From positions 62,001 through 126,000 of the IMG/VR virus record IMGVR_UViG_3300026521_000471: a DNA stretch of 64,000 bases; one strand, written 5' to 3'. Below are positions 8,152 through 21,762 of the stretch, one piece after another; within the stretch, counting starts at the first letter, position 1; each line of letters begins with the position of its first letter. The position numbers and the translations under genes were made by a program. Under the pieces are notes generated by a model. It did not search any database and was not told the DNA's origin. It was given only the letters and a program-made list of their open reading frames with translations.

Positions 8152-8241
8152 ATGAAAATAGTATCAATATTTAACAATTATTTAAACATATTTTATTCGG
8201 CACTAATATCGTACTCTTCTTATTTTAGAGTCTTTCACTAA
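8152..8241 (+). CDS. Leader peptide A (29 aa, MKIVSIFNNYLNIFYSALISYSSYFRVFH)
   Basis: AAGGAG RBS; Ser x5, Tyr x4, Phe x4, Ile x4 (all ATA), one TTA, matching the downstream tRNAs. Confidence 0.8.
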   Translation: MKIVSIFNNYLNIFYSALISYSSYFRVFH

Positions 8242-8330
8242 GAGATAAATTCATTTTTATCCCTTAGTGAAGAACTTAGGGATAAATTGAAAATCTTTCA
8301 AAAATCCCCTATTTTCTTTACAAATTACTT
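8236..8330 (+). promoter_or_regulatory. Attenuator-like switch A
   Basis: Box 1 CACTAAGAGATAAA (8236-8249) and arm 3 (8275-8286) both pair with arm 2 TTTATCCCTTAGTG (8256-8269); C-rich, G-poor tract follows. Confidence 0.7.
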
Positions 8331-8331
8331 T

Positions 8332-8422
8332 GGAGAGTTGGCAGAGTTGGTCGATTGCACCGGTCTTGAAAACCGGCGACGTGTAACAGCGTCCGAGAGT
8401 TCGAATCTCTCACTCTCCACCA
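8332..8422 (+). tRNA. tRNA-Ser(UGA)
   Basis: Type II cloverleaf, CCGGT-CTTGAAA-ACCGG, encoded CCA. Confidence 0.95.
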
Positions 8423-8426
8423 TTTT

Positions 8427-8511
8427 GGAAGCGTAGTCAAGTGGTCAACGACGGCAGACTGTAAATCTGCTCCCTATGGGTTCGGTGGTTCAAATCCACC
8501 CGCTTCCACCA
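8427..8511 (+). tRNA. tRNA-Tyr(GUA)
   Basis: GCAGA-CTGTAAA-TCTGC, V arm, CCA. Confidence 0.95.
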
Positions 8512-8570
8512 TAGAAAAAAATAAAAAATTAAGTTAATCTAAAGGATTAATTTGGTATAATAACTTTATA

Positions 8571-8743
8571 AATTGATTGAAATATGAAAACTTGAAAACG
8601 GATTAAACTGTGGTGGTTTATGATGTGGCGAAGTTGTAAACAAAAGAGCCCGGACCATTAGTAAAAGACTAACCATCTTTGAAAGTGGTACGGAAGCTGT
8701 TTGGATGAAGACGGGTACTAAAGTTTTCATTTTTCAGTCAATT
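8571..8743 (+). ncRNA. Structured RNA domain closed by a ~23-bp stem, abutting the permuted tRNA
   Basis: IR 8571-8593/8721-8743 with G.U on the + strand; GC-enriched multibranch interior. Confidence 0.5.
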
Positions 8744-8776
8744 GATTGAGAATTAAACTAAGAAAATACATCGAAG

Positions 8777-8869
8777 TAAAACCGCTGACATATTGTCTTG
8801 TTGGTTCGAGTCCAACCTTCCCCACCAGTTTATATGGGTGAAGTGGTGAAATTGGTAAACACGGCGGAT
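8777..8869 (+). tRNA. Circularly permuted tRNA, best reconstructed as Leu(UAA): 3' half 8777-8827, spacer, 5' half 8836-8869
   Basis: 3' half has V arm, T arm and CTTCCCC-A-CCA; the downstream 5' half GGG(T)GAAG-TG-GTG-AAATTGGTAAA-CAC-GGCGGAT complements both acceptor and anticodon stems; flanks 8744-8772 and 8867-8901 pair. Confidence 0.65.
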
Positions 8870-8920
8870 GATAAAATATTTCTTAGGATTCAATCTCAAT
8901 CAGGTCTGAAATAAAAAAGC

Positions 8921-8997
8921 GGACAATTAACTCAGTTGGTTAGAGTCACCGCCTCATAAGCGGGAGGTCGCTGGTTCGAGTCCAGCATTGTCCACCA
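8921..8997 (+). tRNA. tRNA(CAU), probably Ile2 (lysidine type, reads AUA)
   Basis: CTCATAA loop, GTCGCTGGTTCGAGTCCAGCA Ile2-like T arm, CCA; leader A uses ATA four times. Confidence 0.85.
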
Positions 8998-9673
8998 TCA
9001 ATACAAAAGTATCATTCAAAATCATTTTAATTTCACGCTCCTTTAAAACTATTAAATTATTAACAACGTCCCATTTTGCTTTATCTCTTTCTCGTTCATA
9101 TCCTTTAACTTCAATAAATATATTTAAATCGGGAATATAAAAATCTGGAAAATATAAGTGTTTTCTTCCTTTCCATTCATATTCAAATGGTTCTGTATCT
9201 CTAATATAGTTAATATCATGTTCCACTAAATATTTTGCTACTATCACTTCCCATGTTCCATGAAATTTATCTCCATTAAATTCAATTATTTTTACTCTAC
9301 CACAAACGTTATTAGCAGAATAACTATCTGGATTATTACGAACCATATCTCTCATTCGTTCTGATTGTTCAATTTTATACTTAGTACTTTTCATATATGC
9401 TTGAAAATTATCTGACATAAAGCCTTGAGGTTCCCAACCATTAATTTCCATATTATGATGTTTGGTCCAATAATGATTTCTAAATTGACCAATAGTTTTA
9501 AAATGTTTATCGCATTTATTACAAATATACTGATTATTATCTATATTAAGAAATTTATCTGACAACATATCTCTTTGATTTTTTTCACAAGCTTTTGTAC
9601 CTATATGACTTTTTAATTTAGTTAAAGAACTAAACTCTTTTCCACAATCAGAACATATTTTTGAGTCATTCAT
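8954..9673 (-). mobile_element. Free-standing homing endonuclease-like gene (C2H2 zinc fingers + PD-(D/E)XK domain)
   Basis: CSDC..H, CNKC..H..H fingers; YFPDFYIPDLNIFIEVKG nuclease motif; antisense insertion in the tRNA cluster. Confidence 0.7.
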
Positions 9674-9702
9674 TAGTCTTCCCTTTTTTGTATAATTTAA
9701 TT

Positions 9703-9768
9703 AGAAGGACAGCAACTCATACTTCCCGAGTTGTTTCTTAATTGGTGCAAACAATTAAGATTACTTCT
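9703..9768 (+). ncRNA. Conserved three-way-junction RNA antisense to an endonuclease 5' UTR (copy 1)
   Basis: AGAAG-GACAG-[stem]-TT-TCTTAA[stem]TTAAGA-TTA-CTTCT, repeated with covariation at 28593-28655; TGTATAAT just upstream. Confidence 0.6.
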
Positions 9769-10265
9769 TTATTACTCTTATTTATACTTATTTTTAATCA
9801 ATTTTAGAAACTTTCTAATATTTTCAAAGGAATTTAAGTTTATTTTAATATATATTATTGTATAATATTATAAATAAAAAGGTTATTAAAAATTATATTA
9901 GCCCACCATTAAAATAATTGATTGCTTAAAGATTTCTTTGAAATTTTTCAGCAGTTAATAGAAATATTAACTTTAGCAAATGAGCCCAAGTATCACCCGA
10001 AGCTATTAAGTAGGGATTGCCTCTCCATTGGAAGATGGCTTGGGAGCCGATTTAAACCGAAGTACAACTCTGTACAAGGACAGTTTTAAAACTGGTGGTT
10101 ATGTGCTTTATTCCTAAAAGCAATGAGTAAAAATTAAGCGTGAAAAATAAAACTCAAAAATAAGGACAGAAAGATGAATTTTACATTTAGTAAGTCCTAC
10201 TATAAATCAGTCTAATTCAATAGGGTTTGTAGTAGGACGTTAATATAATAACAGAAAACTACAAA

Positions 10266-10341
10266 CCCGTTGAAGCTAACTAAGTAGAAGCGCTGGTCTG
10301 AAAAACCAGAGGAGTTGGAGCGTTACCAACCAGCGGGACCA
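10266..10341 (+). tRNA. Non-canonical tRNA-Phe(GAA)
   Basis: Full cloverleaf and CCA, CTGGT-CTGAAAA-ACCAG; no GG in the D loop, T loop AGCGTTA. Confidence 0.75.
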
Positions 10342-10352
10342 TTTTAATTAAT

Positions 10353-10430
10353 GGGACCGTCGAATATCCGGTGACTGTTCGTTGGACTGAAAATCCAAAG
10401 GTAGAGGTTCGACTCCTCTCGGTCCCACCA
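10353..10430 (+). tRNA. tRNA-Phe(GAA)
   Basis: TTGGA-CTGAAAA-TCCAA, T loop TTCGACT, CCA. Confidence 0.9.
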
Positions 10431-10507
10431 TTTAATTTCTTCATTATTACTATAAATATAAAAATCACTCCGATAATCTATAAATAAAAATAAAAAAGAG
10501 ATTAATT

Positions 10508-10798
10508 ATGACTTTAAAAGAATTTAATTATAATGGCTTTGGAGAAGATGATCATCTTAATCCTGATGGAAGTAGAAAACCCTGGCCTCATAAAAGAAAA
10601 GTAGATCCTAATGAGGAAAAAAGAAATAATATTGAATCCGAAATAAAAAAGCTAGAAACTCAATTAACTCGATTAAATAGAAAAATATCAAATACTAAAA
10701 ATCCAAAACAAAAATTTGCTTTAACCAATGATAGACGAGCACCTCTTATAGCAAAGATCCAAAACTTAAAATCAGAATTAAAAAAAATTGTAAAATAA
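10508..10798 (+). CDS. Hypothetical basic coiled-coil late protein
   Basis: ORF track; TATAAATA at 10479. Confidence 0.65.
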   Translation: MTLKEFNYNGFGEDDHLNPDGSRKPWPHKRKVDPNEEKRNNIESEIKKLETQLTRLNRKISNTKNPKQKFALTNDRRAPLIAKIQNLKSELKKIVK

Positions 10799-10816
10799 AA
10801 CCAAAAAGGTTTTATT

Positions 10817-11527
10817 ATGAAAATTGGATTTACAGCAAGCTCATTCGACTTACTCCATGCTGGACATATAGTAATGCTTAAAGAGAGTAAGGAAAATTGC
10901 GATTATTTAATAGTGGGTTTAAATGTCAATCCACATAAAAATGGTCGTTACCCAGTACAAAATGTAGTAGAAAGATATGCTCAATTAGAAGCAGTTAAAT
11001 ATATTGACAAAATTATTCCATACAATTCAGAATCCGAATTAGTAGATTTATTAACTTTATACAAAATAGATATAAGATTCATAGGTGAAGATTATAGAGA
11101 TAAGTCATTTACTGGAGATCACTTACCAATAGAAATTTTCTATAATTCTAGACAACACCGATTTAGTTCATCAGGTTTAAAAAAAGAAGTAGTTAAAAAT
11201 CAAGAAACACCATCTTTAGTAGGTGAAGTTATAAAGGACAATGACACTTATACTTTAATTGACAATACAGAATTAAAAAATTTAGTTGTTTCATCTACGG
11301 TTCTAAAACCATCGCAACATACTAGAGGGCATAAACATGAAGGAATTGAAGAAGTTTATATTTTTCAATCTGGCTTTGGGCGTATTGAAGTGGGTGATGA
11401 GATTAAAGAAGTTAAGGCTGGAGATACAATAATTATTCCAGATGGTCAATTTCATAAAGTTTATAATGATTCTAGTACTGAGGATTTCTCATTTATCGCC
11501 ATATTTAATGATAAACGTAGTCACTAA
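10817..11527 (+). CDS. TagD-like cytidylyltransferase fused to a cupin domain
   Basis: FDLLHAGH (HxGH) and FSSS motifs; C-terminal cupin GHKH..EEVY...IPDGQFHKV. Confidence 0.8.
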   Translation: MKIGFTASSFDLLHAGHIVMLKESKENCDYLIVGLNVNPHKNGRYPVQNVVERYAQLEAVKYIDKIIPYNSESELVDLLTLYKIDIRFIGEDYRDKSFTGDHLPIEIFYNSRQHRFSSSGLKKEVVKNQETPSLVGEVIKDNDTYTLIDNTELKNLVVSSTVLKPSQHTRGHKHEGIEEVYIFQSGFGRIEVGDEIKEVKAGDTIIIPDGQFHKVYNDSSTEDFSFIAIFNDKRSH

Positions 11528-11828
11528 AAAATAATTTTTAAAATTATAAATAATGTATAATAATAATTATAATTTATAATATGAATGGATCTTTTTGAAA
11601 TTGTTTTTCCTATAATTTAATATAACCAAGACGAATAACTGTTTTATATTTTAAGTTATATTTAAAATTTATTTTGTATAATTCTTATTATAGTTTTATT
11701 TGAAACATTTCTAGTGTTTCGATCGACTAAATAGTAAGTCACCCATTTTTAATGGGAAATTATGAGTGCAATTCTCTATCGGAACAAAAAAAATAAAATA
11801 TGTTGAGAAATCAACAAGGAGATTTGTT

Positions 11829-12593
11829 ATGAACAAAACTAAATTAATAATTGTGGGTTTAGTTACAGCTTTAATACTAAGTGGTTGTGGTGATTCAACG
11901 AAGAGCAATATAGATGAAAATTATGTGGTGAAGGTCTCAAGAGGACCAGTTTATGGTGCCGAAGTTAAGGATAGTGCAGACCCTGCTAATATAGCAGTTG
12001 AGATTGAAGGAACTAACACATATCGATTTGCTGTCTCAGAAGACGAAATTGTGCTACCAGTTACTGCTAATGGTGGATTTATTGACGTAAATAACGATGG
12101 AAAAATCGAAGCCGGTGTAGATATGAAATTAAATATGGAGTTGCGTTCTTATACTGAAAACTTAACACCAATTACGACTTATTTGGCAACTGAAGCAAAT
12201 AATACAATAAGAGATGCGAAATTAGATAGTCTTACAAAGTTAGTAAATAATTCAATAGATGACATAAACGTTTCTGATACTGATTTACTTAAAGCAACAG
12301 AAGATGCTTCAACAGAGGCACAATTAGTTATCAATGCGGTTTACAGTAAAATAATTGAAGCTCAAAATTCAAACAGTTCTTTGGAGTTAGATACTGATTC
12401 AGCACAAGCAGACCTAATAGGGAAACTTACGGATTTATCAAATCGTTTGAATACATTCGATGATAATTTAACAGACGCAGAAATTGCTGTAGAACTTGAA
12501 AAGCAAACTATGACTGAGTTAGACATCGATCCTATTTTAGAGGCCGACTTAAATCTAACAACAGAACTTAACATTACAGATATTAGTAGTTAA
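11829..12593 (+). CDS. Host-like lipoprotein
   Basis: Start moved to MNKTKLIIVGLVTALILSG-C lipobox; EF-hand-like DVNNDG. Confidence 0.7.
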   Translation: MNKTKLIIVGLVTALILSGCGDSTKSNIDENYVVKVSRGPVYGAEVKDSADPANIAVEIEGTNTYRFAVSEDEIVLPVTANGGFIDVNNDGKIEAGVDMKLNMELRSYTENLTPITTYLATEANNTIRDAKLDSLTKLVNNSIDDINVSDTDLLKATEDASTEAQLVINAVYSKIIEAQNSNSSLELDTDSAQADLIGKLTDLSNRLNTFDDNLTDAEIAVELEKQTMTELDIDPILEADLNLTTELNITDISS

Positions 12594-12611
12594 ATTTATT
12601 TTAATTCAAAG

Positions 12612-12631
12612 GGAGAGTAATCATACTCTCC
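12612..12631 (+). terminator. Hairpin after the lipoprotein gene (possible terminator)
   Basis: GGAGAGT-AATCAT-ACTCTCC. Confidence 0.5.
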
Positions 12632-12645
12632 TCACCCTCTTTTAT

Positions 12646-12685
12646 GGAAGTGTAACCGAGAGTTCGAATCTCTCCACTTCCACCA
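12646..12685 (+). ncRNA. 40-nt tRNA minihelix (acceptor stem + T arm + ACCA)
   Basis: GGAAGTG-TAACC-GAGAG-TTCGAAT-CTCTC-CACTTCC-A-CCA; all 12 bp perfect. Confidence 0.7.
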
Positions 12686-13025
12686 TTCTAATTTTTTATC
12701 AAATCAATTAATTTCTAAAATTATAAATAATGTATAATAATATTTAAAAGGGTTTTCGTGTACAAAAGCGATATGATAACTCTTACTAAATATGCTATGG
12801 AATTGGTTTAGTTGGGCTAAGGATAAAGGAAGGTTATAATGGAATACCATTATTATCAAATCTAATTGTAATAGCTCCTACGCAGATTTATTACAAAAAT
12901 TTGCTGAGAAGATATCACGAAAACAAACAACTATATTAAAATTGAAGATTGATTTGTTTAAAGTATCAGCCATCTTTGGTGAAGATACCCGTTGATAATT
13001 CTATACACCACATTAAGGAAAATAT

Positions 13026-15212
13026 ATGAAATGGAATATTAATAAAAAATTAAAAGCCATGACAATCATTCCGAGTATAATAATGATATTTGGATTTGGT
13101 TATCTGGTTTATACCGATTATAATGAATATCGAGATTTAGTTGTTTTAGAAAAAACAGTTAAAATCGATACACATATTAATCATTTAGTGCATTTCTTGC
13201 AACAAGAAAGAGGAGCTAGTGCTGGATACGTAGCATCCAATGGTAAAAAATTTAAAAATCAACTATCTGAAATTCGTAAAAAAACTGATACAAAATTCAC
13301 TATCTTAGAGAAAGCATTAAAAGGTAACAGAAATCATTTTACATTAGAAATGTCTAGAAAAATAGATGAGGCACTTCAAATGTATAACGAACTTTCCGTT
13401 ATGCGAAGTAGTATTGATAATTTAACAATAACCGTTCCAGAAACTGTTAAATACTTTAGTTCCATGAATGCAACCTTTTTAGATTTTATTAAACTAAGTA
13501 AAGATTTATCTAATGATAATGAATTTTCAAAACAACTTTCAGTAATTACAGCTATTAGTGCTACAAAAGAATTAGCAGGTAAAGAAAGAGCTGTTATGAC
13601 AAGTGTTTTTGCTAAAGATAAATTTATAGATGGTTTCTATGCACAATTTAAAACTTTAGTAGCATTACAGAAAAGTTATATGGAAAGTTTTAGATTACTT
13701 GCAACTCCAACAGCAATTAAAATTCTTAATGAAATATCTTCTACTTCTCCTTTTTTAGACGTTGAAGAAATGCGAAAGATTGCAATGGAACGAAATAAAG
13801 ATGGGGCTTTTGGTGTTGACTCGGTAAGATGGTTTGATACTATGACTAAAAAAATAAATGGTATGGAACAAATCGAACATAAATTAGAAAATATTCTTCT
13901 AGATGAAATTGATAGTCAAATGAAATATTTATTGTCGATGGTTATTACAATGTTTATCCTTGCAGTCTTAATTACATCTAGTTTAACTTATGCAGGGTAT
14001 AAATTTAATAAATTTTTAATCGATAGAGTGAACAAGATGAATATTATTTTAGAAGATTCTATTAATACTCATAGCTATGATGAACAATTATTAATTTCTA
14101 ATGATGATGAATTATCAAAGATAGAAAATGCAATTAATAAAATGTTTGTGAGTTTAACTGAAGCTGCAGAGGCTAGAAGAATTTCGGATATTGAAATAAA
14201 GAAAAAAGCTGAAGAAACTGCAAAACTATTAGCAAGAAATAATATGAATCTTAAACTGAATAAACTAATGAGTACGCATACAACCGATAACCTAAATGAT
14301 ATTAAAGATGGGCTGAGTGATGGGACTGAAGAATTAGAAAAAATTAATGAAATTAATGATAAAGCCCAAGATAATTTTAATTCTGTTATTGCGGCTAAAA
14401 ATACTATGGTTACTACTTTAGAAACCGTTTCTGAAGGAATGAATTCTACAACAGAAAGAGCGGAACAATTAGAAGAATCTGTTAATGAAATTGCAAGCAT
14501 TATTGGTTTAATCAAAGATATTTCTGAACAAACAAACTTACTTGCACTTAATGCAGCTATTGAAGCAGCAAGAGCGGGTGAGCATGGACGAGGTTTTGCC
14601 GTGGTTGCTGATGAAGTTCGTAAACTAGCTGAGAGAACAGCTGTTGCAACTAAGAATGTAGAAGCGAGTATTAATATCGTTAAACAAAATACTTCTGAAA
14701 TGAATGAAAGTACTGAACAAATGACAGAAAGTATTAAAGATGCTCAAGAGGTATCTCATACTCTAGATGTAGAATTAGACACCTTAATATCTATCAATAG
14801 AAATAATACTGTTAGAAATAATATGATTAGTGAAGATATTCTTGTTACCCTTACTAAATTAGAACATGTTATTTTTAAAATAATGGGTTATAATAGCGTT
14901 TTAGAAGAATGTACAAAATGTGAACCTGTCACTCATGAAGCTTGTAGATTTGGACAATGGTATAAAACTGAGGGAAAAAATAGATATAGTAAAAATTCAT
15001 CTTTTAGAAGTATCGAAATACCGCATAAAGAAGTCCACGAAAATGTTAGAAAAGCCGTTGAATTAATAGGCAAAAAAGATGATGATACTATTATTCGATA
15101 CTTTGAGATCGTAGAAGTAAATTCTAAAAAATTATTTGATCTTTTGACAAGAATAGTTAAAGAAGAAAATGATAAAATGGTTCTGGAGATTAATGATGGA
15201 AAAAATAAATAA
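13026..15212 (+). CDS. Methyl-accepting chemotaxis protein with NIT sensor and C-terminal CZB domain
   Basis: [17 protein letters not shown] (NIT)-TM-HAMP; [35 protein letters not shown] signalling tip; [16 protein letters not shown]. Confidence 0.9.
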
Positions 15213-15431: not shown

Positions 15432-15824
15432 ATGAAAGTACAAAATATTATACCAATATACCAACAACCAAAAATAGAAGATATGGTTGGACAACAAAAA
15501 CAGGAATACCCAAAACCTAGTGTTCCGCCTGAATTACCAAATGAAAACCCAGTAGAATCTCAAGATAAAAAAGAAGATTCTACTAATACAACTCCATCTT
15601 TAACAGATGGACAAACTTTAGCAGTAAAAGCTAATTCAGTTCAAGGTAAAATAGATGCTTATGCTGCTGGAACAGGAATAGATAGAAATGATAATACGCC
15701 TGATTTATCTAATAATCAATTCCAACGAACAATAGACGATCTTAATCAATATAGAGAAATTCAAGATAAAGTTCAGAAACAAAATGGTATCAAAGAATAT
15801 CAATCTATTTTGGGAATGAATTGA
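15432..15824 (+). CDS. Hypothetical late protein
   Basis: TATAAATA 15405, AAGGAG RBS. Confidence 0.7.
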   Translation: MKVQNIIPIYQQPKIEDMVGQQKQEYPKPSVPPELPNENPVESQDKKEDSTNTTPSLTDGQTLAVKANSVQGKIDAYAAGTGIDRNDNTPDLSNNQFQRTIDDLNQYREIQDKVQKQNGIKEYQSILGMN

Positions 15825-15859
15825 TATATTTTTTAAGGTTTTTTTAAGGTTTTTTTATG

Positions 15860-17050
15860 TATAATTTCCTAAGTAAGTTACTAATATTTAGTGTAATTCG
15901 GATATGATTCCATCTTACTATAAAAATCAAAGTTTCACAAAGATCGGGCTTTGTAGGTTAATTAGTTTTGCCTTAGAATAGGTGATCTTTATCGTCAGTA
16001 TATCCATTATATCGATAGTAGAGCGAAAGCGTAGAAGCTGATATAAAGGTGCGATGCCACACAATTAGAATAGTATTAAAGTTGCTACTACCTCAGGACG
16101 AGCAGTTTGATTCTGATGGGTTCGAGTCCCATGATTGAGGAAGGAAGGTTAAGTTCGAGTCTTAACAGTAGCAACTTTTAATTTATTTAAGTTAAGTGTA
16201 TTACTTAGTTTAATTAAATTAAAACATCGGGAAATATTGGTATGGAATCCAATGGTGAATAAATTATTTTTTTCATTTCGACTAAGAACCAGTAGGAAGG
16301 TCACCCGAAATAGTTTAGCAGTTAAAGGTAGATTTGAAACTGTTAAGTAATATTAGCAATTGCAAGCCAATATGAAAATTTAATGGATTAAATAATGAAT
16401 TGAGGGCTTTCTTTGGGTTCTGCAGCGAAAAAGAAAGAACGGTTGCAAACACGTAAAAATGTTGGGAATAATATAATAGTATATTAAATATGCCGACTGG
16501 ATACCGTCTCAGTATGAGCTTAACTCAATTCATTATTTAGTCTATTATAAATAAATTAGTAGCTTCAAGAAATTAAGTTTGATAGTAAAAGCAAATTCTT
16601 TTTAGAATTGAGTGTTAGTGCAAGTCTAACCTAGTTGAATTTATAATAGACATTTTAATCATTTTATAAAGATTACCCTAACCGATAAGGAAATTAGTAC
16701 TAGCCTTATTCGTACAGTTGTACTTATATAATAATTACCTATACGTAAAAAATTGATTTTGGTGATGGATAAGAATTATAATACTAAAGAACCGTTTGAA
16801 CCAATAATCAGAAGAACTGTCTCTCTGAGCAATGGGTAATCTTTATAAGGTGATTAGACTCCATAATTTTTCGTTTTTAGATTACCTCCGAAGGGGTTTA
16901 AAAAATTATGCCTTTTCACCGGTTTTAAATACCATTGGCAGTCGGAGATTGATAAAAAAGTATTGCTTTTTTATTAAGGTTTGTAAGTGAACTAATCAGA
17001 CGTAGAATTTAAGAGTAAGATAATTTCAAGCTATTAAATGACAACCATAA
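15860..17050 (+). ncRNA. ORF-free array of tandem stem-closed structured RNA modules
   Basis: Promoter 15844-15865; perfect IRs 16078-16089/16167-16178, 16390-16404/16524-16538, 16540-16552/16639-16651, 16664-16678/16834-16848. Confidence 0.55.
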
Positions 17051-17135
17051 AATTAAGTGAGTTTTTGGTCTCACTTAAAAATACTTTTTGACTTTATTGT
17101 ATAATAATATATAATCTAATAATAAAGGAATATAT

Positions 17136-17882
17136 ATGTCATATGATTGGTCTAAATACTCTGCATCATCCGATTCTAAAACTCTTAATAGTACAAATCA
17201 ACCAACACTTAAAGAACTTCGAGAAGCATTAATACGACCTTTAGGCGAAAGTATTAATGAAGCAATTGAAGAACATGTATCTACTGCAATGGCAAAAATC
17301 ATTACAGGTAATAATAACGCTGACTCAGCTTTAAGTAACTCTTTGAATAATCAATTAAAAGTTAATGAATCATCATTAGAAAATATATTAAAAAATAATG
17401 AAATATCATTAGAAGCACGAATTAAAAAAACCACAGAAATTATTACTGGTATATTAGTAGGAATATATGATGAAGATATAATAGAAGATACCTTAAAATC
17501 TATCGATATTAATAACTTAACATCAATTAATGATAATTGGGATGGTTTAGAAAAGGGTGCGTCATTTATGAAAAATGACATAAAAAGAAATTCTAATTTT
17601 ACCATGGATAATGGGACGGAACATAATCCAGTAGATCCATTGATTGAATTAACAAGAGCCGTAAAAAGTCTAGTTGTGCAACATACTTGGATGTCAGTAA
17701 AATCTGATAAACAGGCTAGCAATATGGGTGTTGCTGTAGATGGTGTTGTTTCTGAAGCCTTTTACAATGATGCAAAAGCCGCAAATAGAAAAGTAGCAGA
17801 AGATACAGTTCATCAGATTTTAAATTTAGATGGTACACATGATGATGACGGAATTTATCCAAATAATCAGGGATTTGAATAA
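17136..17882 (+). CDS. Hypothetical protein
   Basis: ORF track; AAGGA RBS; coupled to the PAAR gene. Confidence 0.75.
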   Translation: MSYDWSKYSASSDSKTLNSTNQPTLKELREALIRPLGESINEAIEEHVSTAMAKIITGNNNADSALSNSLNNQLKVNESSLENILKNNEISLEARIKKTTEIITGILVGIYDEDIIEDTLKSIDINNLTSINDNWDGLEKGASFMKNDIKRNSNFTMDNGTEHNPVDPLIELTRAVKSLVVQHTWMSVKSDKQASNMGVAVDGVVSEAFYNDAKAANRKVAEDTVHQILNLDGTHDDDGIYPNNQGFE

Positions 17883-18178
17883 TGGGTACTTTAGCGGGTA
17901 GAGTCCCAGATTTAAATACAGGTCACCCACCTTGTTTTACACCTACCGTAGCTATTACAGGTTCTCCAACAGTATTTGCAAATTCATTACCAGCTCATAG
18001 AATGGTTGATTTACATATCCCACATCCTTGTCCTGGAATACCACCACATCCAGTATTTCAAGCGATAGGATGTTCGAGAGTATATGTAAATTCATTAATG
18101 TGGGCTGGAGTTGGACATCCTCAATTATGTCTATCTTTATTATTAACCGGTTCACCGACAGTATTTGTATGTATTTAA
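17882..18178 (+). CDS. PAAR-repeat tail-spike tip protein (T4 gp5.4-like)
   Basis: GH..C.PT..ITGSPTVFANSLPAHRM.D...PH.C and terminal TGSPTVF repeat. Confidence 0.85.
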   Translation: MGTLAGRVPDLNTGHPPCFTPTVAITGSPTVFANSLPAHRMVDLHIPHPCPGIPPHPVFQAIGCSRVYVNSLMWAGVGHPQLCLSLLLTGSPTVFVCI

Positions 18179-18191
18179 AGGAGAGAAATAA

Positions 18192-18578
18192 ATGGACTTA
18201 ACACAAGATGAAATGACAAAATTAAAAAAATTATTAAAAAGTATAAAGTCAATCGAGTCGTCAAATAATATAGATACTATCACGTTTAATAAAACGGTAG
18301 TACTAGAATCTGAAGATAACTTTATAACAATCGCAAATGGTTTTGCAATAACTCAAGCTAAGCAAGTACACCTAAATCCTTTTGAGACTAAAAAAGATAT
18401 AACAGATTCACTTTTGACGTTAGAAAGTCTAGAGTTTAAGAAAAAAATTGTTGAATCTATTGTTTCAAAATTAAATATTATTGCGTCTATAGATGAAATA
18501 GAAGGGATTGTTTCTGGTAGAATTGATATTAATGATTTAATTGATATTGAATCGTTAAAACAATCACAGTTAAGTTAA
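18192..18578 (+). CDS. Hypothetical protein
   Basis: ORF track; AAGGAG RBS. Confidence 0.7.
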   Translation: MDLTQDEMTKLKKLLKSIKSIESSNNIDTITFNKTVVLESEDNFITIANGFAITQAKQVHLNPFETKKDITDSLLTLESLEFKKKIVESIVSKLNIIASIDEIEGIVSGRIDINDLIDIESLKQSQLS

Positions 18579-18580
18579 TT

Positions 18581-18620
18581 TTAAGAACATTTATTGTATA
18601 ATTACAGTAATTAAAAAGAA
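18581..18620 (+). promoter_or_regulatory. Promoter of tRNA array 2
   Basis: TTAAG-N11-TATAAT; 30 nt identical to the array-1 promoter. Confidence 0.7.
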
Positions 18621-18733
18621 TTTAACATTTTTTAAAAAGAATTTCAAAATTTTAGCTAATTTAAGGTTAAAAAAAGAAAACTTTTTGTATAATGTTATAA
18701 ATAAAAATAAAAATTAAATCAAGGAGAATAGTA

Positions 18734-18841
18734 ATGAAAACTATTACACTACAAAATAAAAATATTACTACTATTCATAATGCCAATAAACCGGCGGTCC
18801 TTGAAATTATTAAACAAGAACAGGATAAACAGATTCTGTAA
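18734..18841 (+). CDS. Leader peptide B (35 aa, MKTITLQNKNITTIHNANKPAVLEIIKQEQDKQIL)
   Basis: AAGGAG RBS; 33 of 34 non-Met residues are amino acids served by array-2 tRNAs; Ile only ATT, Leu only CTN. Confidence 0.8.
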   Translation: MKTITLQNKNITTIHNANKPAVLEIIKQEQDKQIL

Positions 18842-18935
18842 GAGATAATTAATCTTATCTTTTACAGAATTGGTTTTCTGTGAGAGATAAGATATTCTAA
18901 ATATCTATTCTCCCACAAAACCTTTTCAATTTTTA
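18834..18935 (+). promoter_or_regulatory. Attenuator-like switch B
   Basis: Box 1 (18834-18848) and arm 3 (18876-18893) both complement arm 2 (18852-18869); C-rich tract follows. Confidence 0.75.
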
Positions 18936-18990
18936 ATATTATTTTAAGATAATTAATTGTATAATTCACTATATCAATTAAGGATTTAAA

Positions 18991-19113
18991 ATGGTTTACT
19001 TTATAACTAGTATTCTGATTCCATCAGTAGTACTTTTAGGTTTAATGTATGTTGTGTATCATCAATATGGTGAAATGAAATACAAAAGTGAAAAACGAAA
19101 AAATAAAAATTAA
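18991..19113 (+). CDS. Small membrane protein (40 aa)
   Basis: Own promoter at about 18944, AAGGA RBS, one hydrophobic helix and a basic tail. Confidence 0.55.
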   Translation: MVYFITSILIPSVVLLGLMYVVYHQYGEMKYKSEKRKNKN

Positions 19114-19225
19114 GGAACGAGTCAATGAAAGACAAGAGCGACAAGTGTCGTAAAACAATTCAAACTCTGTTTTCTTAAATAGTCATTAAAAGTGATTGTT
19201 TAGGATGCGGAGTATAAACTATTCC

Positions 19226-19302
19226 GTATCCGTAACTCAACTGGATAGAGTATTCGGCTTTTAACCGAAAGGTTGTGAGTTCAAGTCTCACCGGATACAC
19301 CA
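19226..19302 (+). tRNA. tRNA-Lys(UUU) copy 1
   Basis: TTCGG-CTTTTAA-CCGAA, CCA; D loop carries A20. Confidence 0.9.
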
Positions 19303-19304
19303 TT

Positions 19305-19380
19305 GGGTGTATAGCTCAGTTGGTAGAGCACATCACTTTTAATGATGGGGTCTAGGGTTCAAATCCCTATGCACCCACCA
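19305..19380 (+). tRNA. tRNA-Lys(UUU) copy 2
   Basis: CATCA-CTTTTAA-TGATG, CCA. Confidence 0.93.
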
Positions 19381-19464
19381 ATGTAGCATTTTACTAAGAA
19401 GATTAGATTCTTTTTATTAAAGTGTTATTGTTAGGACGCTAACATAACTCTTAGGAGTATTTTT

Positions 19465-19539
19465 ATAGTAGTAATAACCTTTGTCGGTTTCTCCTTACTA
19501 AGGAAATGAGTTCGAGTCTCATTAAAGGCTTACTACTAT
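19465..19539 (+). ncRNA. D-armless tRNA-like element in a long closing stem
   Basis: ATAGTAGTAA/TTACTACTAT stem, CCTTT/AAAGG, anticodon-like hairpin and T arm TGAG-TTCGAGT-CTCA. Confidence 0.45.
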
Positions 19540-19599
19540 ATCAAAAAGTAATAGCGTGGAGTAATTAACCACAAAATTATATACTCCGATTTTAAATAT

Positions 19600-19675
19600 T
19601 GCGGAGTGGAGCAGTTGGTAGCTCGCTGGGCTCATAACCCGGAGGTCATTGGTTCAAGTCCAATCTCCGCCACCA
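19600..19675 (+). tRNA. Initiator tRNA-fMet(CAU)
   Basis: 1:72 mismatch (U.C), three G-C pairs closing the anticodon loop, CCA. Confidence 0.93.
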
Positions 19676-19719
19676 AATTTTAAAAATTAGATTTTTTTAA
19701 CAATGTGTATAAATAGATT

Positions 19720-20008
19720 ATATATACATTTTTAAGAGAATTAAAGATGGAAATTACATCGAATTATTGGAAATTAGGAAACAACTTTCCATTGATTTTA
19801 TCTCTTACAACCGAGAAAAAGCCATAAATTGAGTGGTGTTGTAAAACTAAGAGTTGTCTAAGTTACCTGAAAGAATGGTTATTAAATAGATGCACCCAGT
19901 AAGAAAGTGCCGGGCATCAACTAAACTTAATATTATTAATTTAATATGAATGACAAACGGGCGGAGTATGGTATAAACAGGGCAGCTCAAAATTTATAAA
20001 TGTATATG
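19720..20008 (+). ncRNA. Unidentified structured RNA between fMet and Ala tRNAs
   Basis: Late promoter 19708; terminal stem 19722-19731/19998-20007; several internal hairpins; no convincing ORF. Confidence 0.4.
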
Positions 20009-20013
20009 AAAAT

Positions 20014-20089
20014 GGGGCATTAGCTCATCTGGGAGAGCGCTACCCTTGCAAGGTAGAGGCGAACGGTTCGAGTCCGTTATGCTCCACCA
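20014..20089 (+). tRNA. tRNA-Ala(UGC)
   Basis: G3.U70, CTTGCAA loop, CCA. Confidence 0.95.
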
Positions 20090-20171
20090 TTTTTAAAAAT
20101 TTATTAAAGCTTTTAATAAAAGTTTTAACAAGTTTTTACTTGAAAATAAAAATTAAATTAAGGAAATTAGT

Positions 20172-20330
20172 ATGAGAACAATTAATACAATTACAACTAC
20201 TGTAAATACACTTATTAATAACACTATTGATACTCATGCAAATGATATTATTAATATTCATACTAATGAACAAATTCTGGATATTCAGCCGAATATTCAA
20301 GAAGATGAGCAGGAACCAATCTTTCTGTAA
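20172..20330 (+). CDS. Leader peptide C (52 aa, MRTINTITTTVNTLINNTIDTHANDIINIHTNEQILDIQPNIQEDEQEPIFL)
   Basis: AAGGA RBS; 47 of 51 non-Met codons are Ile/Thr/Asn/Asp/Gln/Glu/Leu(CTN)/His/Pro, the downstream tRNA set; no Lys, ATA or TTA. Confidence 0.85.
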   Translation: MRTINTITTTVNTLINNTIDTHANDIINIHTNEQILDIQPNIQEDEQEPIFL

Positions 20331-20430
20331 GAGATAACTTAAACTTTATCCCTTACAGAGAGATTTGTAGGGGATAAAAGAAACAAACTTTCCACTTTCT
20401 TTTCTCAATCCTTTACAAACTCTCTAAATT
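20324..20430 (+). promoter_or_regulatory. Attenuator-like switch C
   Basis: Box 1 (20324-20337) and arm 3 (20364-20377) both complement arm 2 (20345-20359); long G-free C/T-rich tract follows. Confidence 0.75.
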
Positions 20431-20435
20431 ATTAT

Positions 20436-20519
20436 TGTGATATGCGCCGAATGGTAAGGTAGCCGACTGTTAATCGGTCGAGAGAAATCTCATTGCTGGT
20501 TCGAATCCAGCTATCACAG
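20436..20519 (+). tRNA. tRNA-Asn(GUU) with an unusual long variable arm
   Basis: GCCGA-CTGTTAA-TCGGT, V hairpin GAGA-GAAA-TCTC, G73; followed by CC then the next tRNA. Confidence 0.85.
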
Positions 20520-20521
20520 CC

Positions 20522-20598
20522 CGTCCCTTAGCTCAGTTGGTTAGAGCGTTCCGCTGATAACGGAGAGGTCGGAAGTTCAAATCTTCCAGGGACGACCA
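20522..20598 (+). tRNA. tRNA-Ile(GAU)
   Basis: TTCCG-CTGATAA-CGGAG, CCA. Confidence 0.95.
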
Positions 20599-20612
20599 TA
20601 AAAATTAAATAC

Positions 20613-20689
20613 GGTCTGTTAGTTCAGTTGGTTAGAACGCAACCCTGTCAAGGTTGAGGTCACCGGTTCGAGTCCGGTACAGATCGCCA
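20613..20689 (+). tRNA. tRNA-Asp(GUC) copy 1
   Basis: CAACC-CTGTCAA-GGTTG, G73, CCA. Confidence 0.95.
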
Positions 20690-20693
20690 TTAC

Positions 20694-20767
20694 TGAGGTA
20701 TCGTCTAGTGGTAGGACATCTGGTTTTGGTCCAGAGAGCGGGGGTTCGAACCCCTCTACCTCGTCCA
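20694..20767 (+). tRNA. tRNA-Gln(UUG) copy 1
   Basis: TCTGG-TTTTGGT-CCAGA, CCA. Confidence 0.93.
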
Positions 20768-20780
20768 TTGTGTATTTTGC

Positions 20781-20851
20781 TGGGCTATCGTCTAGTGGCA
20801 GGACTCCGTCTTTTGGCGGCGGTAACATAGGTTCGAATCCTATTAGCCCAT
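20781..20851 (+). tRNA. tRNA-Gln(UUG) copy 2
   Basis: CCGTC-TTTTGGC-GGCGG; no encoded CCA. Confidence 0.9.
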
Positions 20852-20895
20852 CAAAGTACATTGTACTTTTATCAATGAAGATATAAAAATAAAAC

Positions 20896-20970
20896 GGCTC
20901 CATGGAGAAGTGGTTATCTCATCGCTCTTTCACAGCGAAATCTCGGGTTCAAATCCCGATGGAGTCACCA
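20896..20970 (+). tRNA. tRNA-Glu(UUC) copy 1
   Basis: TCGCT-CTTTCAC-AGCGA, CCA. Confidence 0.95.
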
Positions 20971-20979
20971 AATTTAATT

Positions 20980-21062
20980 GCCGAAATGGTGGAATTGGTA
21001 GACACGCTAGACTTAGGATCTAGTGCTTTTGCGTGAGAGTTCGAGTCTCTCTTTCGGCACCA
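20980..21062 (+). tRNA. tRNA-Leu(UAG)
   Basis: CTAGA-CTTAGGA-TCTAG, V arm, CCA. Confidence 0.95.
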
Positions 21063-21132
21063 TTATATCAATTTATTGATGAAGCCTTAATTTAAATATT
21101 AAAGTTTCACAAATAAATTGTTACGAGCTTTA

Positions 21133-21232
21133 GAATCGCACATAGGATACGCGGCCTATGTAGCAGAAGTACCCACTTTAAGGAGGGAGATAGATTTCAA
21201 GGGATTGAAATTGAATATCCAGAATGCGATTC
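21133..21232 (+). ncRNA. Unidentified multibranch RNA inside tRNA array 2
   Basis: Closing stem GAATCGCA/TGCGATTC with three internal hairpins. Confidence 0.45.
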
Positions 21233-21242
21233 ATTAAAAAAT

Positions 21243-21319
21243 GTCGATGTATATCAACTGGTTAGATTGCCACCCTGTCAAGGTGGAGGTTGTGGGTTCG
21301 AGTCCCATCATTGACGCCA
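21243..21319 (+). tRNA. tRNA-Asp(GUC) copy 2
   Basis: CCACC-CTGTCAA-GGTGG, G73, CCA. Confidence 0.92.
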
Positions 21320-21322
21320 AAT

Positions 21323-21397
21323 GCTTCGTTCGACTATCGGCTAGGTCATTAGGTTTTCATCCTAAAAAGAGGGGTTCGATTCCCCTACGAAGTACCA
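21323..21397 (+). tRNA. tRNA-Glu(UUC) copy 2
   Basis: TTAGG-TTTTCAT-CCTAA, CCA. Confidence 0.92.
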
Positions 21398-21410
21398 TTT
21401 TTTATTATAA

Positions 21411-21488
21411 CGGGGTGTGGGAAAGTTTGGTTAATCCGCTACTTTTGGGAAGTAGAAATCCTCAGTTCGAGTCTGAGCACCCCGACCA
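21411..21488 (+). tRNA. tRNA-Pro(UGG)
   Basis: C1-G72, TTTGGGA loop, CCA. Confidence 0.93.
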
Positions 21489-21501
21489 TTTACATATCAA
21501 T

Positions 21502-21577
21502 GCCGATTTAGCTCAGTTGGTAGAGCAACTCACTTGTAATGAGTAGGCCTGGAGTTCAAATCTTCAAATCGGCACCA
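21502..21577 (+). tRNA. tRNA-Thr(UGU)
   Basis: ACTCA-CTTGTAA-TGAGT, CCA. Confidence 0.95.
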
Positions 21578-21595
21578 CTTCTAATTGTTAAATAT

Positions 21596-21673
21596 GGTAG
21601 TAGTAGCTCAGTTGGTTAGAGCGACGGTTTGTGGCACCGTAGGTCGTGGGTTCGAATCCCATCTATTACCCCA
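21596..21673 (+). tRNA. tRNA-His(GUG)
   Basis: G-1:C73, ACGGT-TTGTGGC-ACCGT, CCA. Confidence 0.95.
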
Positions 21674-21675
21674 TT

Positions 21676-21762
21676 GTCGATATGGTGAAATTGGTAAACA
21701 CACTACCTTGAGGGGGTAGCGCCTATTAAGGTTTGAGAGTTCGAATCTCTCTATCGACACCA
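21676..21762 (+). tRNA. tRNA-Leu(GAG)
   Basis: CTACC-TTGAGGG-GGTAG, V arm, CCA. Confidence 0.95.

What the first reader, a model, noticed from the sequence alone, without database searches (positions are those of the whole stretch)
8152..21762. Codon-barcoded leader-peptide attenuators that appear to gate phage tRNA arrays (candidate new system)
Seen: three short ORFs missed by the ORF track (8152-8241, 18734-18841, 20172-20330) each have a strong RBS and end in the same stop box (TAAGAGATAA). Each is followed by arm 2, which can pair either with the stop box (1:2) or with a downstream near-copy of it (2:3), then by a C-rich, G-poor tract and tRNA genes. The peptides are unrelated in sequence, but the codons of each mirror its own downstream tRNAs: A uses Ser/Tyr/Phe/ATA-Ile/TTA; B and C use ATT-Ile and CTN-Leu only, although ATA and TTA are abundant in the rest of this window; C has no Lys, and the Lys tRNAs lie upstream of it. 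The promoters of A and B share 30 identical nt. Established: ribosome-mediated attenuation (trpL, hisL, thrL, pheM) senses charged tRNA through leader codons, normally for one to three amino acids and for biosynthetic or synthetase operons. Inference: the phage reads out the availability of a whole tRNA panel and transcribes replacement tRNAs only when ribosomes stall, for example after host anticodon-nuclease defence or starvation. I do not recall this being described for tRNA arrays or phages. No U-tract follows the 2:3 hairpins directly, so Rho-dependent termination or a processing switch is as plausible as intrinsic termination.
Basis: partly seen in the sequence, partly recalled or inferred. 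Interest (0 to 1): 0.96.

Follow-up and report, generated by a model that had tools for sequence, protein, structure and literature searches.

The report
Codon-matched leader switches before phage tRNA arrays
A jumbo phage places short translated leader ORFs, built almost only from codons read by the tRNA genes downstream and ending inside a four-arm RNA switch, in front of its tRNA arrays; this looks like amino-acid-operon attenuation re-used to sense a whole panel of tRNAs.

Summary
The three ORFs, their ribosome-binding sites, the shared stop box and arms 2 and 3 are where stated. There are exactly three copies in 64 kb.

The "C-rich tract" pairs with arm 3, which gives the 1:2 / 2:3 / 3:4 layout of an attenuator.

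Relatives in at least seven metagenomic phage lineages keep all three leader types. Peptide sequences drift, but codon content stays matched to the downstream tRNAs:
- C has 47 of 51 residues from its array's nine amino acids (P about 1e-9).
- B and C types use ATT/ATC for Ile in 80 of 80 codons and CTN for Leu in 30 of 30, with ATA/TTA present only out of frame.
- A types use ATA and TCN.

Where lineages have repartitioned their arrays (L088, L064/L083), the leaders changed to match. The true leader-to-array pairing is the best of 40,320 permutations. In L088 the arm sequences are entirely different, yet the fold flips in the same way.

Best reading: a ribosome-transit sensor. A ribosome that reaches the stop box in time gives 2:3; a late one leaves 1:2 plus 3:4.

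The direction and output of the switch (intrinsic termination, Rho or processing) are unresolved. I found no description of this in the searched literature.

The parts
8071..8079 (+). Promoter-like extended -10 (TTGTATAAT) upstream of leader A
   Evidence: The motif occurs 21 times in the window against 3.75 expected, 20 of them on the + strand. About 30 nt around it are shared with the B promoter.
8152..8241 (+). Leader ORF A (29 codons). Rich in Ser (TCN), Tyr and Phe; all Ile codons are ATA. SD AAGGAG at 8139-8144.
   Evidence: S+Y is 9/28 against a background of 0.108. Six homologues have divergent peptides but the same codon bias.
8228..8248 (+). A arm 1. Includes the last four codons and the stop box TAAGAGATAA.
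   Evidence: Folds. The 1:2 pairing is 93.8% paired over 19 homologues, with 3 pairs changed on both sides.
8255..8277 (+). A arm 2. Pairs with arm 1 (-20.9 kcal/mol) or with arm 3 (-14.0 kcal/mol).
8274..8285 (+). A arm 3. A near-copy of arm 1 that pairs with arm 2 or arm 4.
8304..8320 (+). A arm 4 (ATCCCCTA) plus a U-rich run. This is the 3' half of a terminator-like 3:4 hairpin.
   Evidence: All six A-type homologues have a GGG/CCC stem followed by 4-7 U.
8332..8511 (+). tRNA-Ser(TGA) and tRNA-Tyr(GTA), directly downstream of switch A
   Evidence: Every A-type leader whose downstream tRNAs could be read (five of six; none was detected in L074) is followed by Ser and Tyr tRNAs.
18594..18693 (+). 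Two TTGTATAAT promoter-like sites upstream of leader B
18734..18841 (+). Leader ORF B (35 codons). 33 of 34 residues come from the amino acids of arrays B and C. Ile is ATT only and Leu is CTN only.
18832..18848 (+). B arm 1 with the stop box
18852..18869 (+). B arm 2
   Evidence: 1:2 -20.3, 2:3 -22.6 kcal/mol
18876..18893 (+). B arm 3
18910..18934 (+). B arm 4 (CTCCCACAAAACC) followed by TTTTCAATTTTT
   Evidence: Conserved in seven B-type homologues. In L064 an A-to-G change in arm 3 is matched by a U-to-C change in arm 4.
18957..19113 (+). Further promoter-like site and a 40-aa membrane-protein ORF, lying between switch B and the Lys tRNAs
   Evidence: Conserved in L041, L045 and L043.
19226..20089 (+). 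Array B: tRNA-Lys x2, initiator-like tRNA-Met and tRNA-Ala, with unidentified structured RNAs between them
20172..20330 (+). Leader ORF C (52 codons). 47 of 51 residues are N, I, D, Q, E, L, P, T or H. No Lys, Ser, Tyr or Gly.
   Evidence: (binomial 1e-9; 0 of 200,000 gene windows)
20318..20337 (+). C arm 1 with the stop box
20345..20359 (+). C arm 2
   Evidence: 1:2 -21.7, 2:3 -19.5 kcal/mol
20364..20383 (+). C arm 3
20396..20425 (+). C arm 4, within a G-free tract that starts at 20381 and runs to about 20430. 3:4 is -21.8 kcal/mol. No U-run follows.
20435..21762 (+). Array C: Asn, Ile(GAT), Asp, Gln x2, Glu, Leu(TAG), Asp, Glu, Pro, Thr, His, Leu(GAG)

Best explanation
Each element is a cis-acting sensor of ribosome transit time in front of a phage tRNA operon.

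How the sensor is built. A promoter drives a short, strongly initiated ORF. The ORF is written almost only in codons read by the tRNAs encoded downstream on the same transcript. B reports arrays B and C together, and C reports array C alone. The stop codon lies inside arm 1, and arm 2 starts 16-19 nt after it.

How it switches:
- A ribosome that reaches the end of the ORF covers arm 1 but not arm 2. Arm 2 then pairs with arm 3 as arm 3 emerges.
- A ribosome slowed anywhere in the ORF by a shortage of one of those tRNAs arrives too late. The lowest-energy fold, 1:2 plus 3:4, locks in.

The choice between the two folds sets how much RNA polymerase, or how much intact precursor, continues into the tRNA genes.

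What is shown:
- the ORFs are under frame-specific selection;
- codon content matches the downstream tRNA set and co-varies with it;
- the four arms and their alternative pairings are conserved, even where the arm sequences differ.

What is inferred: the coupling to transcription, and the direction of the response.

My estimates for the direction, as shares of the whole:
- Feedback, shortage gives more array RNA: about 0.55. Within this, about 0.35 for a route where the 2:3 state exposes the G-free arm-4 tract to Rho or a nuclease and 3:4 hides it, and about 0.2 for a classical stall on arm 1 that prevents a 3:4 terminator.
- The opposite sign, efficient decoding licenses read-through of a 3:4 terminator: about 0.25.

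The confidence given here is for the sensor itself, whatever its sign.
For: Translation:
- All 17 full-length leaders have an ATG and AAGGAG/AAGGA.
- The ORFs stay open across lineages with length changes in whole codons.
- In B and C leaders ATA, TTA and TAT occur 17-31 times each out of frame and never in frame.

Codon matching:
- C 47/51 (1e-9), B 33/34 (2.5e-5), A S+Y 9/28 (2e-3; 101 of 200,000 gene windows).
- Ile is ATT/ATC in 80 of 80 codons and Leu is CTN in 30 of 30 in B/C types. In A types Ile is ATA in 20 of 22 and Ser is TCN in 35 of 35.

Co-variation:
- L088 leader 1 has 41 of 41 residues in the union of its two arrays, which include Tyr and Phe but not Leu or His. Leader 2 has 32 of 35 in its six-amino-acid array (2e-12).
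- The L064 B leader lost Thr, Asp and Asn and gained Ile and Gln, in step with its array.
- The true leader-to-array pairing is the best of 40,320 permutations.

Structure:
- 1:2 is 93.8% paired and 2:3 is 95.2% paired, against about 50% when the partners are slid. Both have pairs changed on both sides.
- 3:4 is predicted in all 19 homologues.
- The L088 switches have unrelated arm sequences (no model hit). They still flip 1:2, then 2:3, then 1:2 plus 3:4 as the RNA lengthens.
- The same flip, and the effect of a ribosome mask, are seen in the window.
- Energies have the ordering of classical attenuators.
Against: - There are no expression data. Termination, pausing and Rho involvement are all unobserved.
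- Only the A and B types have a U-rich run after 3:4. The C type and both L088 switches do not. Canonical terminators are in any case barely above chance in this phage, 10 found against 4.9 expected.
- B, and the C-type switches of L045 and L043, are followed by another promoter-like site. The switch therefore cannot be the only control of the arrays.
- Ribosome-mask folding shows that only stalls in the last 4-6 codons open arm 1. This fits a classical stall model poorly for type A, whose Ser/Tyr codons lie just upstream of that window.
- Covariation rests on few independent events.
- The L083 C-type leader matches the ancestral array better than its own reduced array.
Confidence: 0.75

Rival explanations
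1. Same sensor, opposite sign. The 3:4 hairpin is a terminator, and only a ribosome that decodes the leader quickly reaches arm 1 in time to form 2:3 and let polymerase through. The arrays are then licensed, or amplified by their own products, through efficient decoding of their own codons.
For: The geometry supports it: the stop codon is inside arm 1, the spacing to arm 2 is 16-19 nt, and cognate codons run through the whole ORF, so any delay favours 1:2 plus 3:4. In A and B types 3:4 is followed by a U-rich run.
Against: It gives a counter-intuitive response, with less tRNA made when tRNA is short. There is no U-run in the C type or in L088. In A types the U-run pairs with an upstream A-run and changes together with it, AAGAA/UUCUU against AAUAA/UUAUU. 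It may therefore be part of the helix rather than a terminator tail.
Confidence: 0.25
2. The switch controls processing or stability of the tRNA precursor rather than transcription termination, for example through access for RNase E, RNase III or RNase P near arm 4.
For: Arm 4 ends 10-25 nt before the first tRNA in A and C. Several switches lack a U-run. Promoters downstream of some switches argue against simple transcriptional gating.
Against: No cleavage signal is recognisable. The co-transcriptional flip-flop of folds is what a kinetic, transcription-coupled decision needs.
Confidence: 0.12
3. The ORFs encode small functional peptides, and the hairpins are ordinary 3' stabilisers or terminators. 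On this view the match to the tRNAs is incidental.
For: The N-termini (MKTI, MRTI) and C-termini (the last 5-7 residues) are conserved within the B and C types.
Against: A-type peptides are almost unalignable yet keep their Ser/Tyr/Phe/ATA content. Synonymous codon choice is exclusive and array-specific. Composition tracks array content across lineages. The conserved C-termini coincide with arm 1. There are no Pfam or PHROG matches.
Confidence: 0.04
4. Untranslated repeats at the DNA or RNA level, such as protein operators, recombination sites or homing-endonuclease targets. The ORFs would then be accidental.
For: Arms 1 and 2 form a near-palindrome in the DNA. HNH-type endonuclease genes are inserted in the arrays.
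Against: G-U pairs work only on the + strand, and model scores are 68-80 bits on the + strand against 34-43 on the - strand. Codon avoidance is frame-specific. SD and ATG are conserved. The L088 switches keep the topology with different sequences.
Confidence: 0.03

Closest known systems
Ribosome-mediated transcription attenuators of amino-acid operons (trpL, hisL, thrL, leuL, ilvL, pheL) and of pheST (pheM)
   Same: Both have a short leader ORF with a strong ribosome-binding site, enrichment for codons cognate to what the operon supplies, and mutually exclusive 1:2 / 2:3 / 3:4 hairpins with the same energy ordering. A and B types also have a U-rich run after 3:4.
   Different: The regulated genes here are tRNA genes in a phage. 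The leader reports 2 to 11 amino acids at once, down to the choice of synonymous codon. Cognate codons fill the whole ORF rather than a run inside segment 1. The stop codon lies inside arm 1, too far from arm 2 for a terminating ribosome to mask arm 2. Several copies lack a U-tract.
Leader-ORF control of Rho-dependent termination (Salmonella mgtA/mgtL and mgtCBR/mgtP; E. coli tnaC)
   Same: In both, the speed of leader translation, set by particular codons, chooses between alternative stem-loops that hide or expose a single-stranded C-rich, G-poor tract. This would explain switches that have no U-tract.
   Different: No rut site, boxA or Rho dependence has been shown here. The known systems sense one amino acid or ligand and control protein genes. 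This comparison is from my own knowledge and was not tested.
pyrBI / pyrE attenuation (coupling of polymerase and the lead ribosome)
   Same: In both, the outcome depends on whether the lead ribosome is close enough behind the polymerase to prevent a hairpin.
   Different: There the variable is polymerase speed, set by UTP. Here it would be ribosome speed, set by tRNA supply.
T-box riboswitches
   Same: Both would adjust translation-related genes to the state of specific tRNAs.
   Different: T-boxes bind uncharged tRNA directly and need no ORF. No T-box or other Rfam family matches here.
tRNA gene clusters of T4-like and T5-like phages
   Same: Both are clusters of phage tRNA genes interspersed with small RNAs and homing endonucleases, transcribed from upstream phage promoters.
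   Different: I know of no leader-peptide switch described for them, and four full-text searches found none. The region of Vibrio phage Va1 that I fetched has no copy.

Membership tests
Classical leader-peptide transcription attenuator | Short leader ORF with a functional translation start | tested here: met
   ATG plus AAGGAG/AAGGA in 17 of 17 leaders. Frame-specific codon selection. ORFs kept open with whole-codon indels.
Classical leader-peptide transcription attenuator | Leader enriched in codons cognate to the regulated function | tested here: met
   P values range from 2e-3 to 2e-12, and the true pairing is the best of 40,320 permutations.
Classical leader-peptide transcription attenuator | Mutually exclusive hairpins 1:2, 2:3 and 3:4 | tested here: met
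   Rests on prediction plus covariation; there is no probing.
Classical leader-peptide transcription attenuator | 3:4 is an intrinsic terminator (G+C-rich stem followed by a U-tract) | tested here: inconclusive
   A types and B types have a U-run. C types and both L088 switches do not. The simple scan did not:4; it called B's 1:2 hairpin instead.
Classical leader-peptide transcription attenuator | Regulatory codons placed so that a stalled ribosome masks segment 1, and the stop codon placed so that a terminating ribosome masks segment 2 | tested here: not met
   Only the last 4-6 codons open arm 1. The stop codon lies 16-19 nt before arm 2, beyond the ribosome footprint.
Classical leader-peptide transcription attenuator | Read-through responds to the supply of charged tRNA | not testable with these tools
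   Needs expression assays.
Rho-dependent leader-ORF attenuation (mgtA/tna type) | Rho loading site whose exposure depends on leader translation | tested here: inconclusive
   G-free C/U-rich tracts of 32-56 nt overlap arm 4. They are also simply the 3' strand of a purine-rich hairpin. Rho dependence cannot be tested here.
T-box riboswitch | Specifier loop and T-box sequence that bind tRNA | tested here: not met
   No Rfam match at gathering or E-value thresholds.

The most novel reading that the evidence does not exclude
These phages run a tRNA-pool homeostat. Each array is preceded by a leader that reads out, codon by codon, the decoding speed of exactly the tRNA species encoded downstream. 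The leader raises array output when any one of them runs short, for example after host tRNA decay or cleavage by an anticodon nuclease. That would be the first attenuator known to control tRNA genes, and the first to integrate up to eleven amino-acid channels in one leader.
Probability: 0.42. Interest if true: 0.92.

Novelty: new variant of a known kind. Interest (0 to 1): 0.86.

Why it matters
How phages regulate the tRNAs they carry is largely unknown. Leader-peptide attenuation has been tied to amino-acid biosynthesis and a few synthetase genes, each sensing one to three amino acids.

This family shows selection writing a multi-channel codon "barcode", down to synonymous codons, that follows the tRNA content of the operon as arrays are reshuffled. 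If it is functional, it would mean three things:
- Phages monitor decoding capacity for their own tRNA set.
- There is a natural, compact and reprogrammable sensor of the availability of specific tRNAs.
- Annotators gain a rule: an SD-ORF whose stop codon lies in a hairpin just before tRNA genes. The rule can find such controls elsewhere and predict which tRNAs are co-transcribed.

Tried and rejected
- Nucleotide search of GenBank phages found only tRNA-level matches.
- Single-protein scans of IMG/VR returned only the source contig.
- The two-arm pattern in IMG/VR gave 38 stretches. All were chance palindromes except the three copies in the source contig.
- The three-arm pattern in one genome per species gave only chance hits, so I saw no cellular copies.
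- A search with leader C as a protein found only three entries.
- Rfam has no family for the leaders, and Pfam and PHROGs have none for the peptides.
- The fetched region of Vibrio phage Va1, a 33% relative, has no tRNA array or switch.
- I looked for a leader before the L088 Met/Met/Thr/Arg cluster and found none. Not every array has one.
- The idea that 2:3 or 1:2 is the terminator was rejected for A and C, which have no U-run after them. B's 1:2 is followed by GGTTTTCTGT and was flagged by the simple scan, so it stays open for B.
- Predicted pairing of ORF-internal segments with the SD or start region is noted but not relied on, because both partners are invariant.
- I could not put the A-type 3:4 outer helix into one alignment register for a formal pair count. 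That covariation is by inspection only.

Full report
CONTEXT. The window is bases 62001-126000 of IMG/VR contig IMGVR_UViG_3300026521_000471, which is 224,467 bp long. It has about 28% G+C, and nearly all genes are on the + strand. A 715-aa marker protein is 33% identical to proteins of Campylobacter CP220-like phages and Vibrio Va1-like phages. A more distant relative carries a Gp23-type capsid gene. This is therefore a T4-like jumbo phage. It encodes a chemoreceptor, an aspartyl-tRNA synthetase and a chaperonin. The nearest named cellular chemoreceptor comes from a Sulfurimonas MAG at 37% identity, which is a weak hint that the host is a Campylobacterota. The window holds 22 tRNA genes found by ARAGORN and two more tRNA-like hits from Rfam.

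THE OBSERVATION. Each region folds 3.6-4.9 sd better than shuffled sequence. A covariance model built from 19 homologues finds exactly three copies in 64 kb. It scores 68-80 bits on the + strand and only 34-43 bits on the reverse strand. Leaders A and B lie downstream of TTGTATAAT, a motif present 21 times in the window against 3.75 expected.

The "C-rich, G-poor tract" pairs with arm 3, so the lowest-energy fold of each region is 1:2 plus 3:4.

RELATIVES. No close relative exists in GenBank phages or IMG/VR. Protein searches and one metagenome pattern scan recovered homologues of all three leader types:
- a sister phage at 86% marker identity (L041/L068, 221.5 kb);
- more distant contigs L045/L046/L055, L043/L052, L067, L073, L064/L083-86, L070, L071, L074, L075 and L090;
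- a 331-kb phage, L088.

In every full-length copy the ORF has an ATG and an AAGGAG-like site. The ORFs stay open although their lengths differ (A 28-37, B 34-44, C 50-60 codons). The one apparent frameshift, in L067, still ends at the second TAA of the stop box.

Every A-type leader whose downstream tRNAs could be read (five of six; none was detected in L074) precedes tRNA-Ser and tRNA-Tyr. B types precede Lys, Lys and Ala. C types precede the large array.

CODON BARCODE. The background is 12,509 codons from 36 long ORFs of the window.
- Leader C has 47 of 51 residues in the nine amino acids of array C. The background fraction is 0.526, the binomial tail is 1e-9, and none of 200,000 same-length gene windows reaches this count.
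- Leader B has 33 of 34 residues in the union of arrays B and C (2.5e-5). This fits a transcript that runs through both arrays.
- Leader A has 9 of 28 residues that are Ser or Tyr, against a background of 0.108.

At codon level, over all homologues:
- B and C types use ATT/ATC for Ile in 80 of 80 codons, matching tRNA-Ile(GAT).
- B and C types use CTN for Leu in 30 of 30 codons, matching tRNA-Leu(TAG) and (GAG).
- Window genes use ATA for 34% of Ile codons and TTA/TTG for 67% of Leu codons.
- A types use ATA in 20 of 22 Ile codons and TCN in 35 of 35 Ser codons.

The avoidance is frame-specific. In B and C leaders ATA, TTA and TAT occur 17-31 times each out of frame and never in frame. The reading frame is therefore under selection. 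A-type peptides are hardly alignable yet keep the same composition. This pattern is what a regulatory leader would show, not a functional peptide.

CO-VARIATION.
(1) In L088 the tRNAs are partitioned differently. Leader 1 is followed by Glu, Asp, Tyr, Gln, Asn, Lys, Lys. Leader 2 is followed by Glu, Ile, Ala, Pro, Ile, Phe, Ala, Thr, Pro.
- Leader 1 has 41 of 41 residues in the union of the two arrays (8e-9). It contains Tyr and Phe, which B and C leaders of the window clade lack. It has no Leu or His, which those leaders contain.
- Leader 2 has 32 of 35 residues in its own six amino acids (2e-12). It has none of Lys, Asp, Tyr, Gln or Asn, whose tRNAs lie upstream of it.

(2) In the L064/L083 lineage two tRNA-Ile(GAT) genes and a tRNA-Gln sit in the B array.
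- The B leader there is dominated by Lys, Ile (all ATT), Gln and Ala, and has lost Thr and Asp.
- The C-type leader now lies downstream of the Ile tRNAs, and no Leu tRNA is in sight. It uses ATA for 3 of 5 Ile codons and TTA for 6 of 10 Leu codons.

(3) I scored eight leaders against eight downstream anticodon sets. The true pairing has the highest total score of all 40,320 permutations. Two leaders (L083-C and L071-A) match a relative's fuller set slightly better than their own.

RNA SWITCH. Over 19 homologues:
- The 1:2 pairing is 93.8% paired, against 41-53% when partners are slid. Three pairs changed on both sides (CAC..GTG in A types against CTG..CAG in B and C types).
- The 2:3 pairing is 95.2% paired, with two pairs changed on both sides. 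One of them is C-G to U-A, at a position where arm 1 stays A.
- A 3:4 hairpin is predicted in all 19.

By inspection, 3:4 shows matched changes as well. TAGGG/CCCTA in some A types is TTGGG/CCAA or CCCA in others. L064 has an A-to-G change in arm 3 with a U-to-C change in arm 4.

Energies in kcal/mol for 1:2, 2:3 and 3:4 are:
- A: -20.9, -14.0, -12.5
- B: -20.3, -22.6, -18.4
- C: -21.7, -19.5, -21.8

As the RNA lengthens, the best fold goes from 1:2 to 2:3 (in B and C) and then to 1:2 plus 3:4. The two L088 switches have unrelated arm sequences and are not hit by the model. They still show the same three-step flip, with the stop codon again in arm 1. This is the strongest structural evidence.

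The first base of the stop codon lies 16-19 nt before arm 2 in all five designs. That is just beyond a ribosome's downstream footprint.

MECHANISM. Shown: the leaders are under frame-specific selection of the kind translation imposes, are matched to downstream tRNAs, and end in a conserved four-arm switch. Inferred: ribosome position selects the fold.

Folding with a ribosome mask shows that only an A site in the last 4-6 codons, or at the stop, opens arm 1 and gives 2:3. Cognate codons fill the whole ORF, and the terminating ribosome covers arm 1 but not arm 2. The simplest logic is therefore a race:
- A ribosome that arrives in time gives 2:3.
- A delayed ribosome leaves 1:2 plus 3:4.

The output step is open. 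In A and B types 3:4 is followed by a U-rich run and looks like an intrinsic terminator. With the race logic, that would make efficient decoding the ON signal. C types and L088 have no such run. In A types the run pairs, and changes together, with an upstream A-run. Canonical terminators are barely above chance in this phage.

If the single-stranded G-free arm-4 tract exposed in the 2:3 state is instead an entry site for Rho or a nuclease, then shortage is the ON signal, as in mgtA-type leaders. A classical stall on arm 1 remains possible for codons near the 3' end of each ORF. In B and C types those codons are all cognate apart from one structurally constrained Phe.

I put feedback (shortage gives more array RNA) at about 0.55, licensing at about 0.25, and other outputs or no regulation at about 0.2.

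Additional promoters lie after switch B and after the C-type switches of L045 and L043. The switches therefore modulate the arrays rather than solely gate them.

COMPARISON AND NOVELTY. The anatomy is that of a leader-peptide attenuator. Membership in the classical family fails on two points: the placement of the regulatory and stop codons, and, for several copies, the absence of a U-tract. There is no T-box or other Rfam family. Four full-text searches found no report of leader-peptide control of tRNA genes or of phage tRNA arrays. That is absence in the searched library, not proof of novelty. I class this as a new variant of a known kind, with an unusual target (tRNA genes) and an unprecedented multi-amino-acid, synonymous-codon-level barcode.

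LIMITS.
- All structures are predictions.
- Covariation rests on few events.
- The background for L088 used 3,003 codons.
- The identity of the CAT tRNA at 8921 as an ATA reader rests only on my recollection of its resemblance to tRNA-Ile2.
- The host is unknown.

Noticed in passing
window 7284-7785 (+): Strong sub-threshold match to GOLLD RNA (110.7 bits, E 2e-29, gathering score 150). A tRNA-like element is embedded at 7347-7416, and TTGTATAAT promoters lie upstream at 6578 and 6850.
   Followed up: no
window 8780-8885 (+); also L068 and L075: A tRNA 3' half (T-arm and an acceptor end with CCA) is followed within 8 nt by a 5' half that resembles a type II tRNA. The order looks like a permuted or split tRNA(Leu)-like gene. 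It is conserved in two relatives. Rfam gives only weak hits to permuted tmRNA (E 0.6).
   Followed up: partly
window 19125-19178 (+); L045, L043, L064: A conserved 17-19 codon ORF with an SD, rich in Lys codons (it starts MKDKSDK), lies just before the pair of tRNA-Lys genes. The nucleotides are conserved even where the C-terminal frame differs. A hairpin after it includes the first 7-9 nt of tRNA-Lys. It may be a further mini-leader.
   Followed up: partly
L071 1071-1139 and L075 3519-3575: A short SD-ORF with three or four ATA codons runs into a tRNA-Ile(TAT)-like gene. That gene has an unusual anticodon loop, which ARAGORN reads as TAT in L071 and as ATA in L075. This looks like a different leader design with the same codon-matching idea. 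It is absent from the window.
   Followed up: partly
window 8954-9673 (-); L041 5742-6527; L064 2557-3390; L089 8551-9393: Zinc-finger/HNH-type homing-endonuclease-like genes are inserted in or beside the tRNA arrays. One overlaps the 3' end of the CAT tRNA. The insertions differ between relatives, which fits the observed reshuffling of arrays.
   Followed up: no
window 19400-19545, 19730-20010, 21100-21240 (+): Conserved non-coding stretches lie between tRNAs, with no Rfam match. The 19730-20010 element follows a TATAAATA (T4-late-like) motif at about 19708. It starts with a TAAGAGA/TCTCTTA hairpin whose insert varies in size between relatives.
   Followed up: no
window 13026-15212, 32364-34214, 59726-61351 (+): The phage carries a chemoreceptor (NIT, MCP signalling and CZB domains), an aspartyl-tRNA synthetase and a Cpn60-type chaperonin. 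The chemoreceptor is conserved in relatives at 46-82% identity.
   Followed up: partly
window 5962-6062 (+): Weak match to RAGATH-33 RNA (33 bits, E 5e-4), in a region with several tRNA-like fragments (5779-6340).
   Followed up: no
window 20435-20522 (+): tRNA-Asn(GTT) is called at 88 nt with a long extra arm, which is unusual for Asn. The homologue in the sister phage is 83 nt.
   Followed up: no
L043 (GCA_029935755.1, contig of 496 kb) and L088 (contig of 331 kb): Relatives that carry the same leader system sit on very large contigs. If these are phage genomes, they are among the larger ones known.
   Followed up: no
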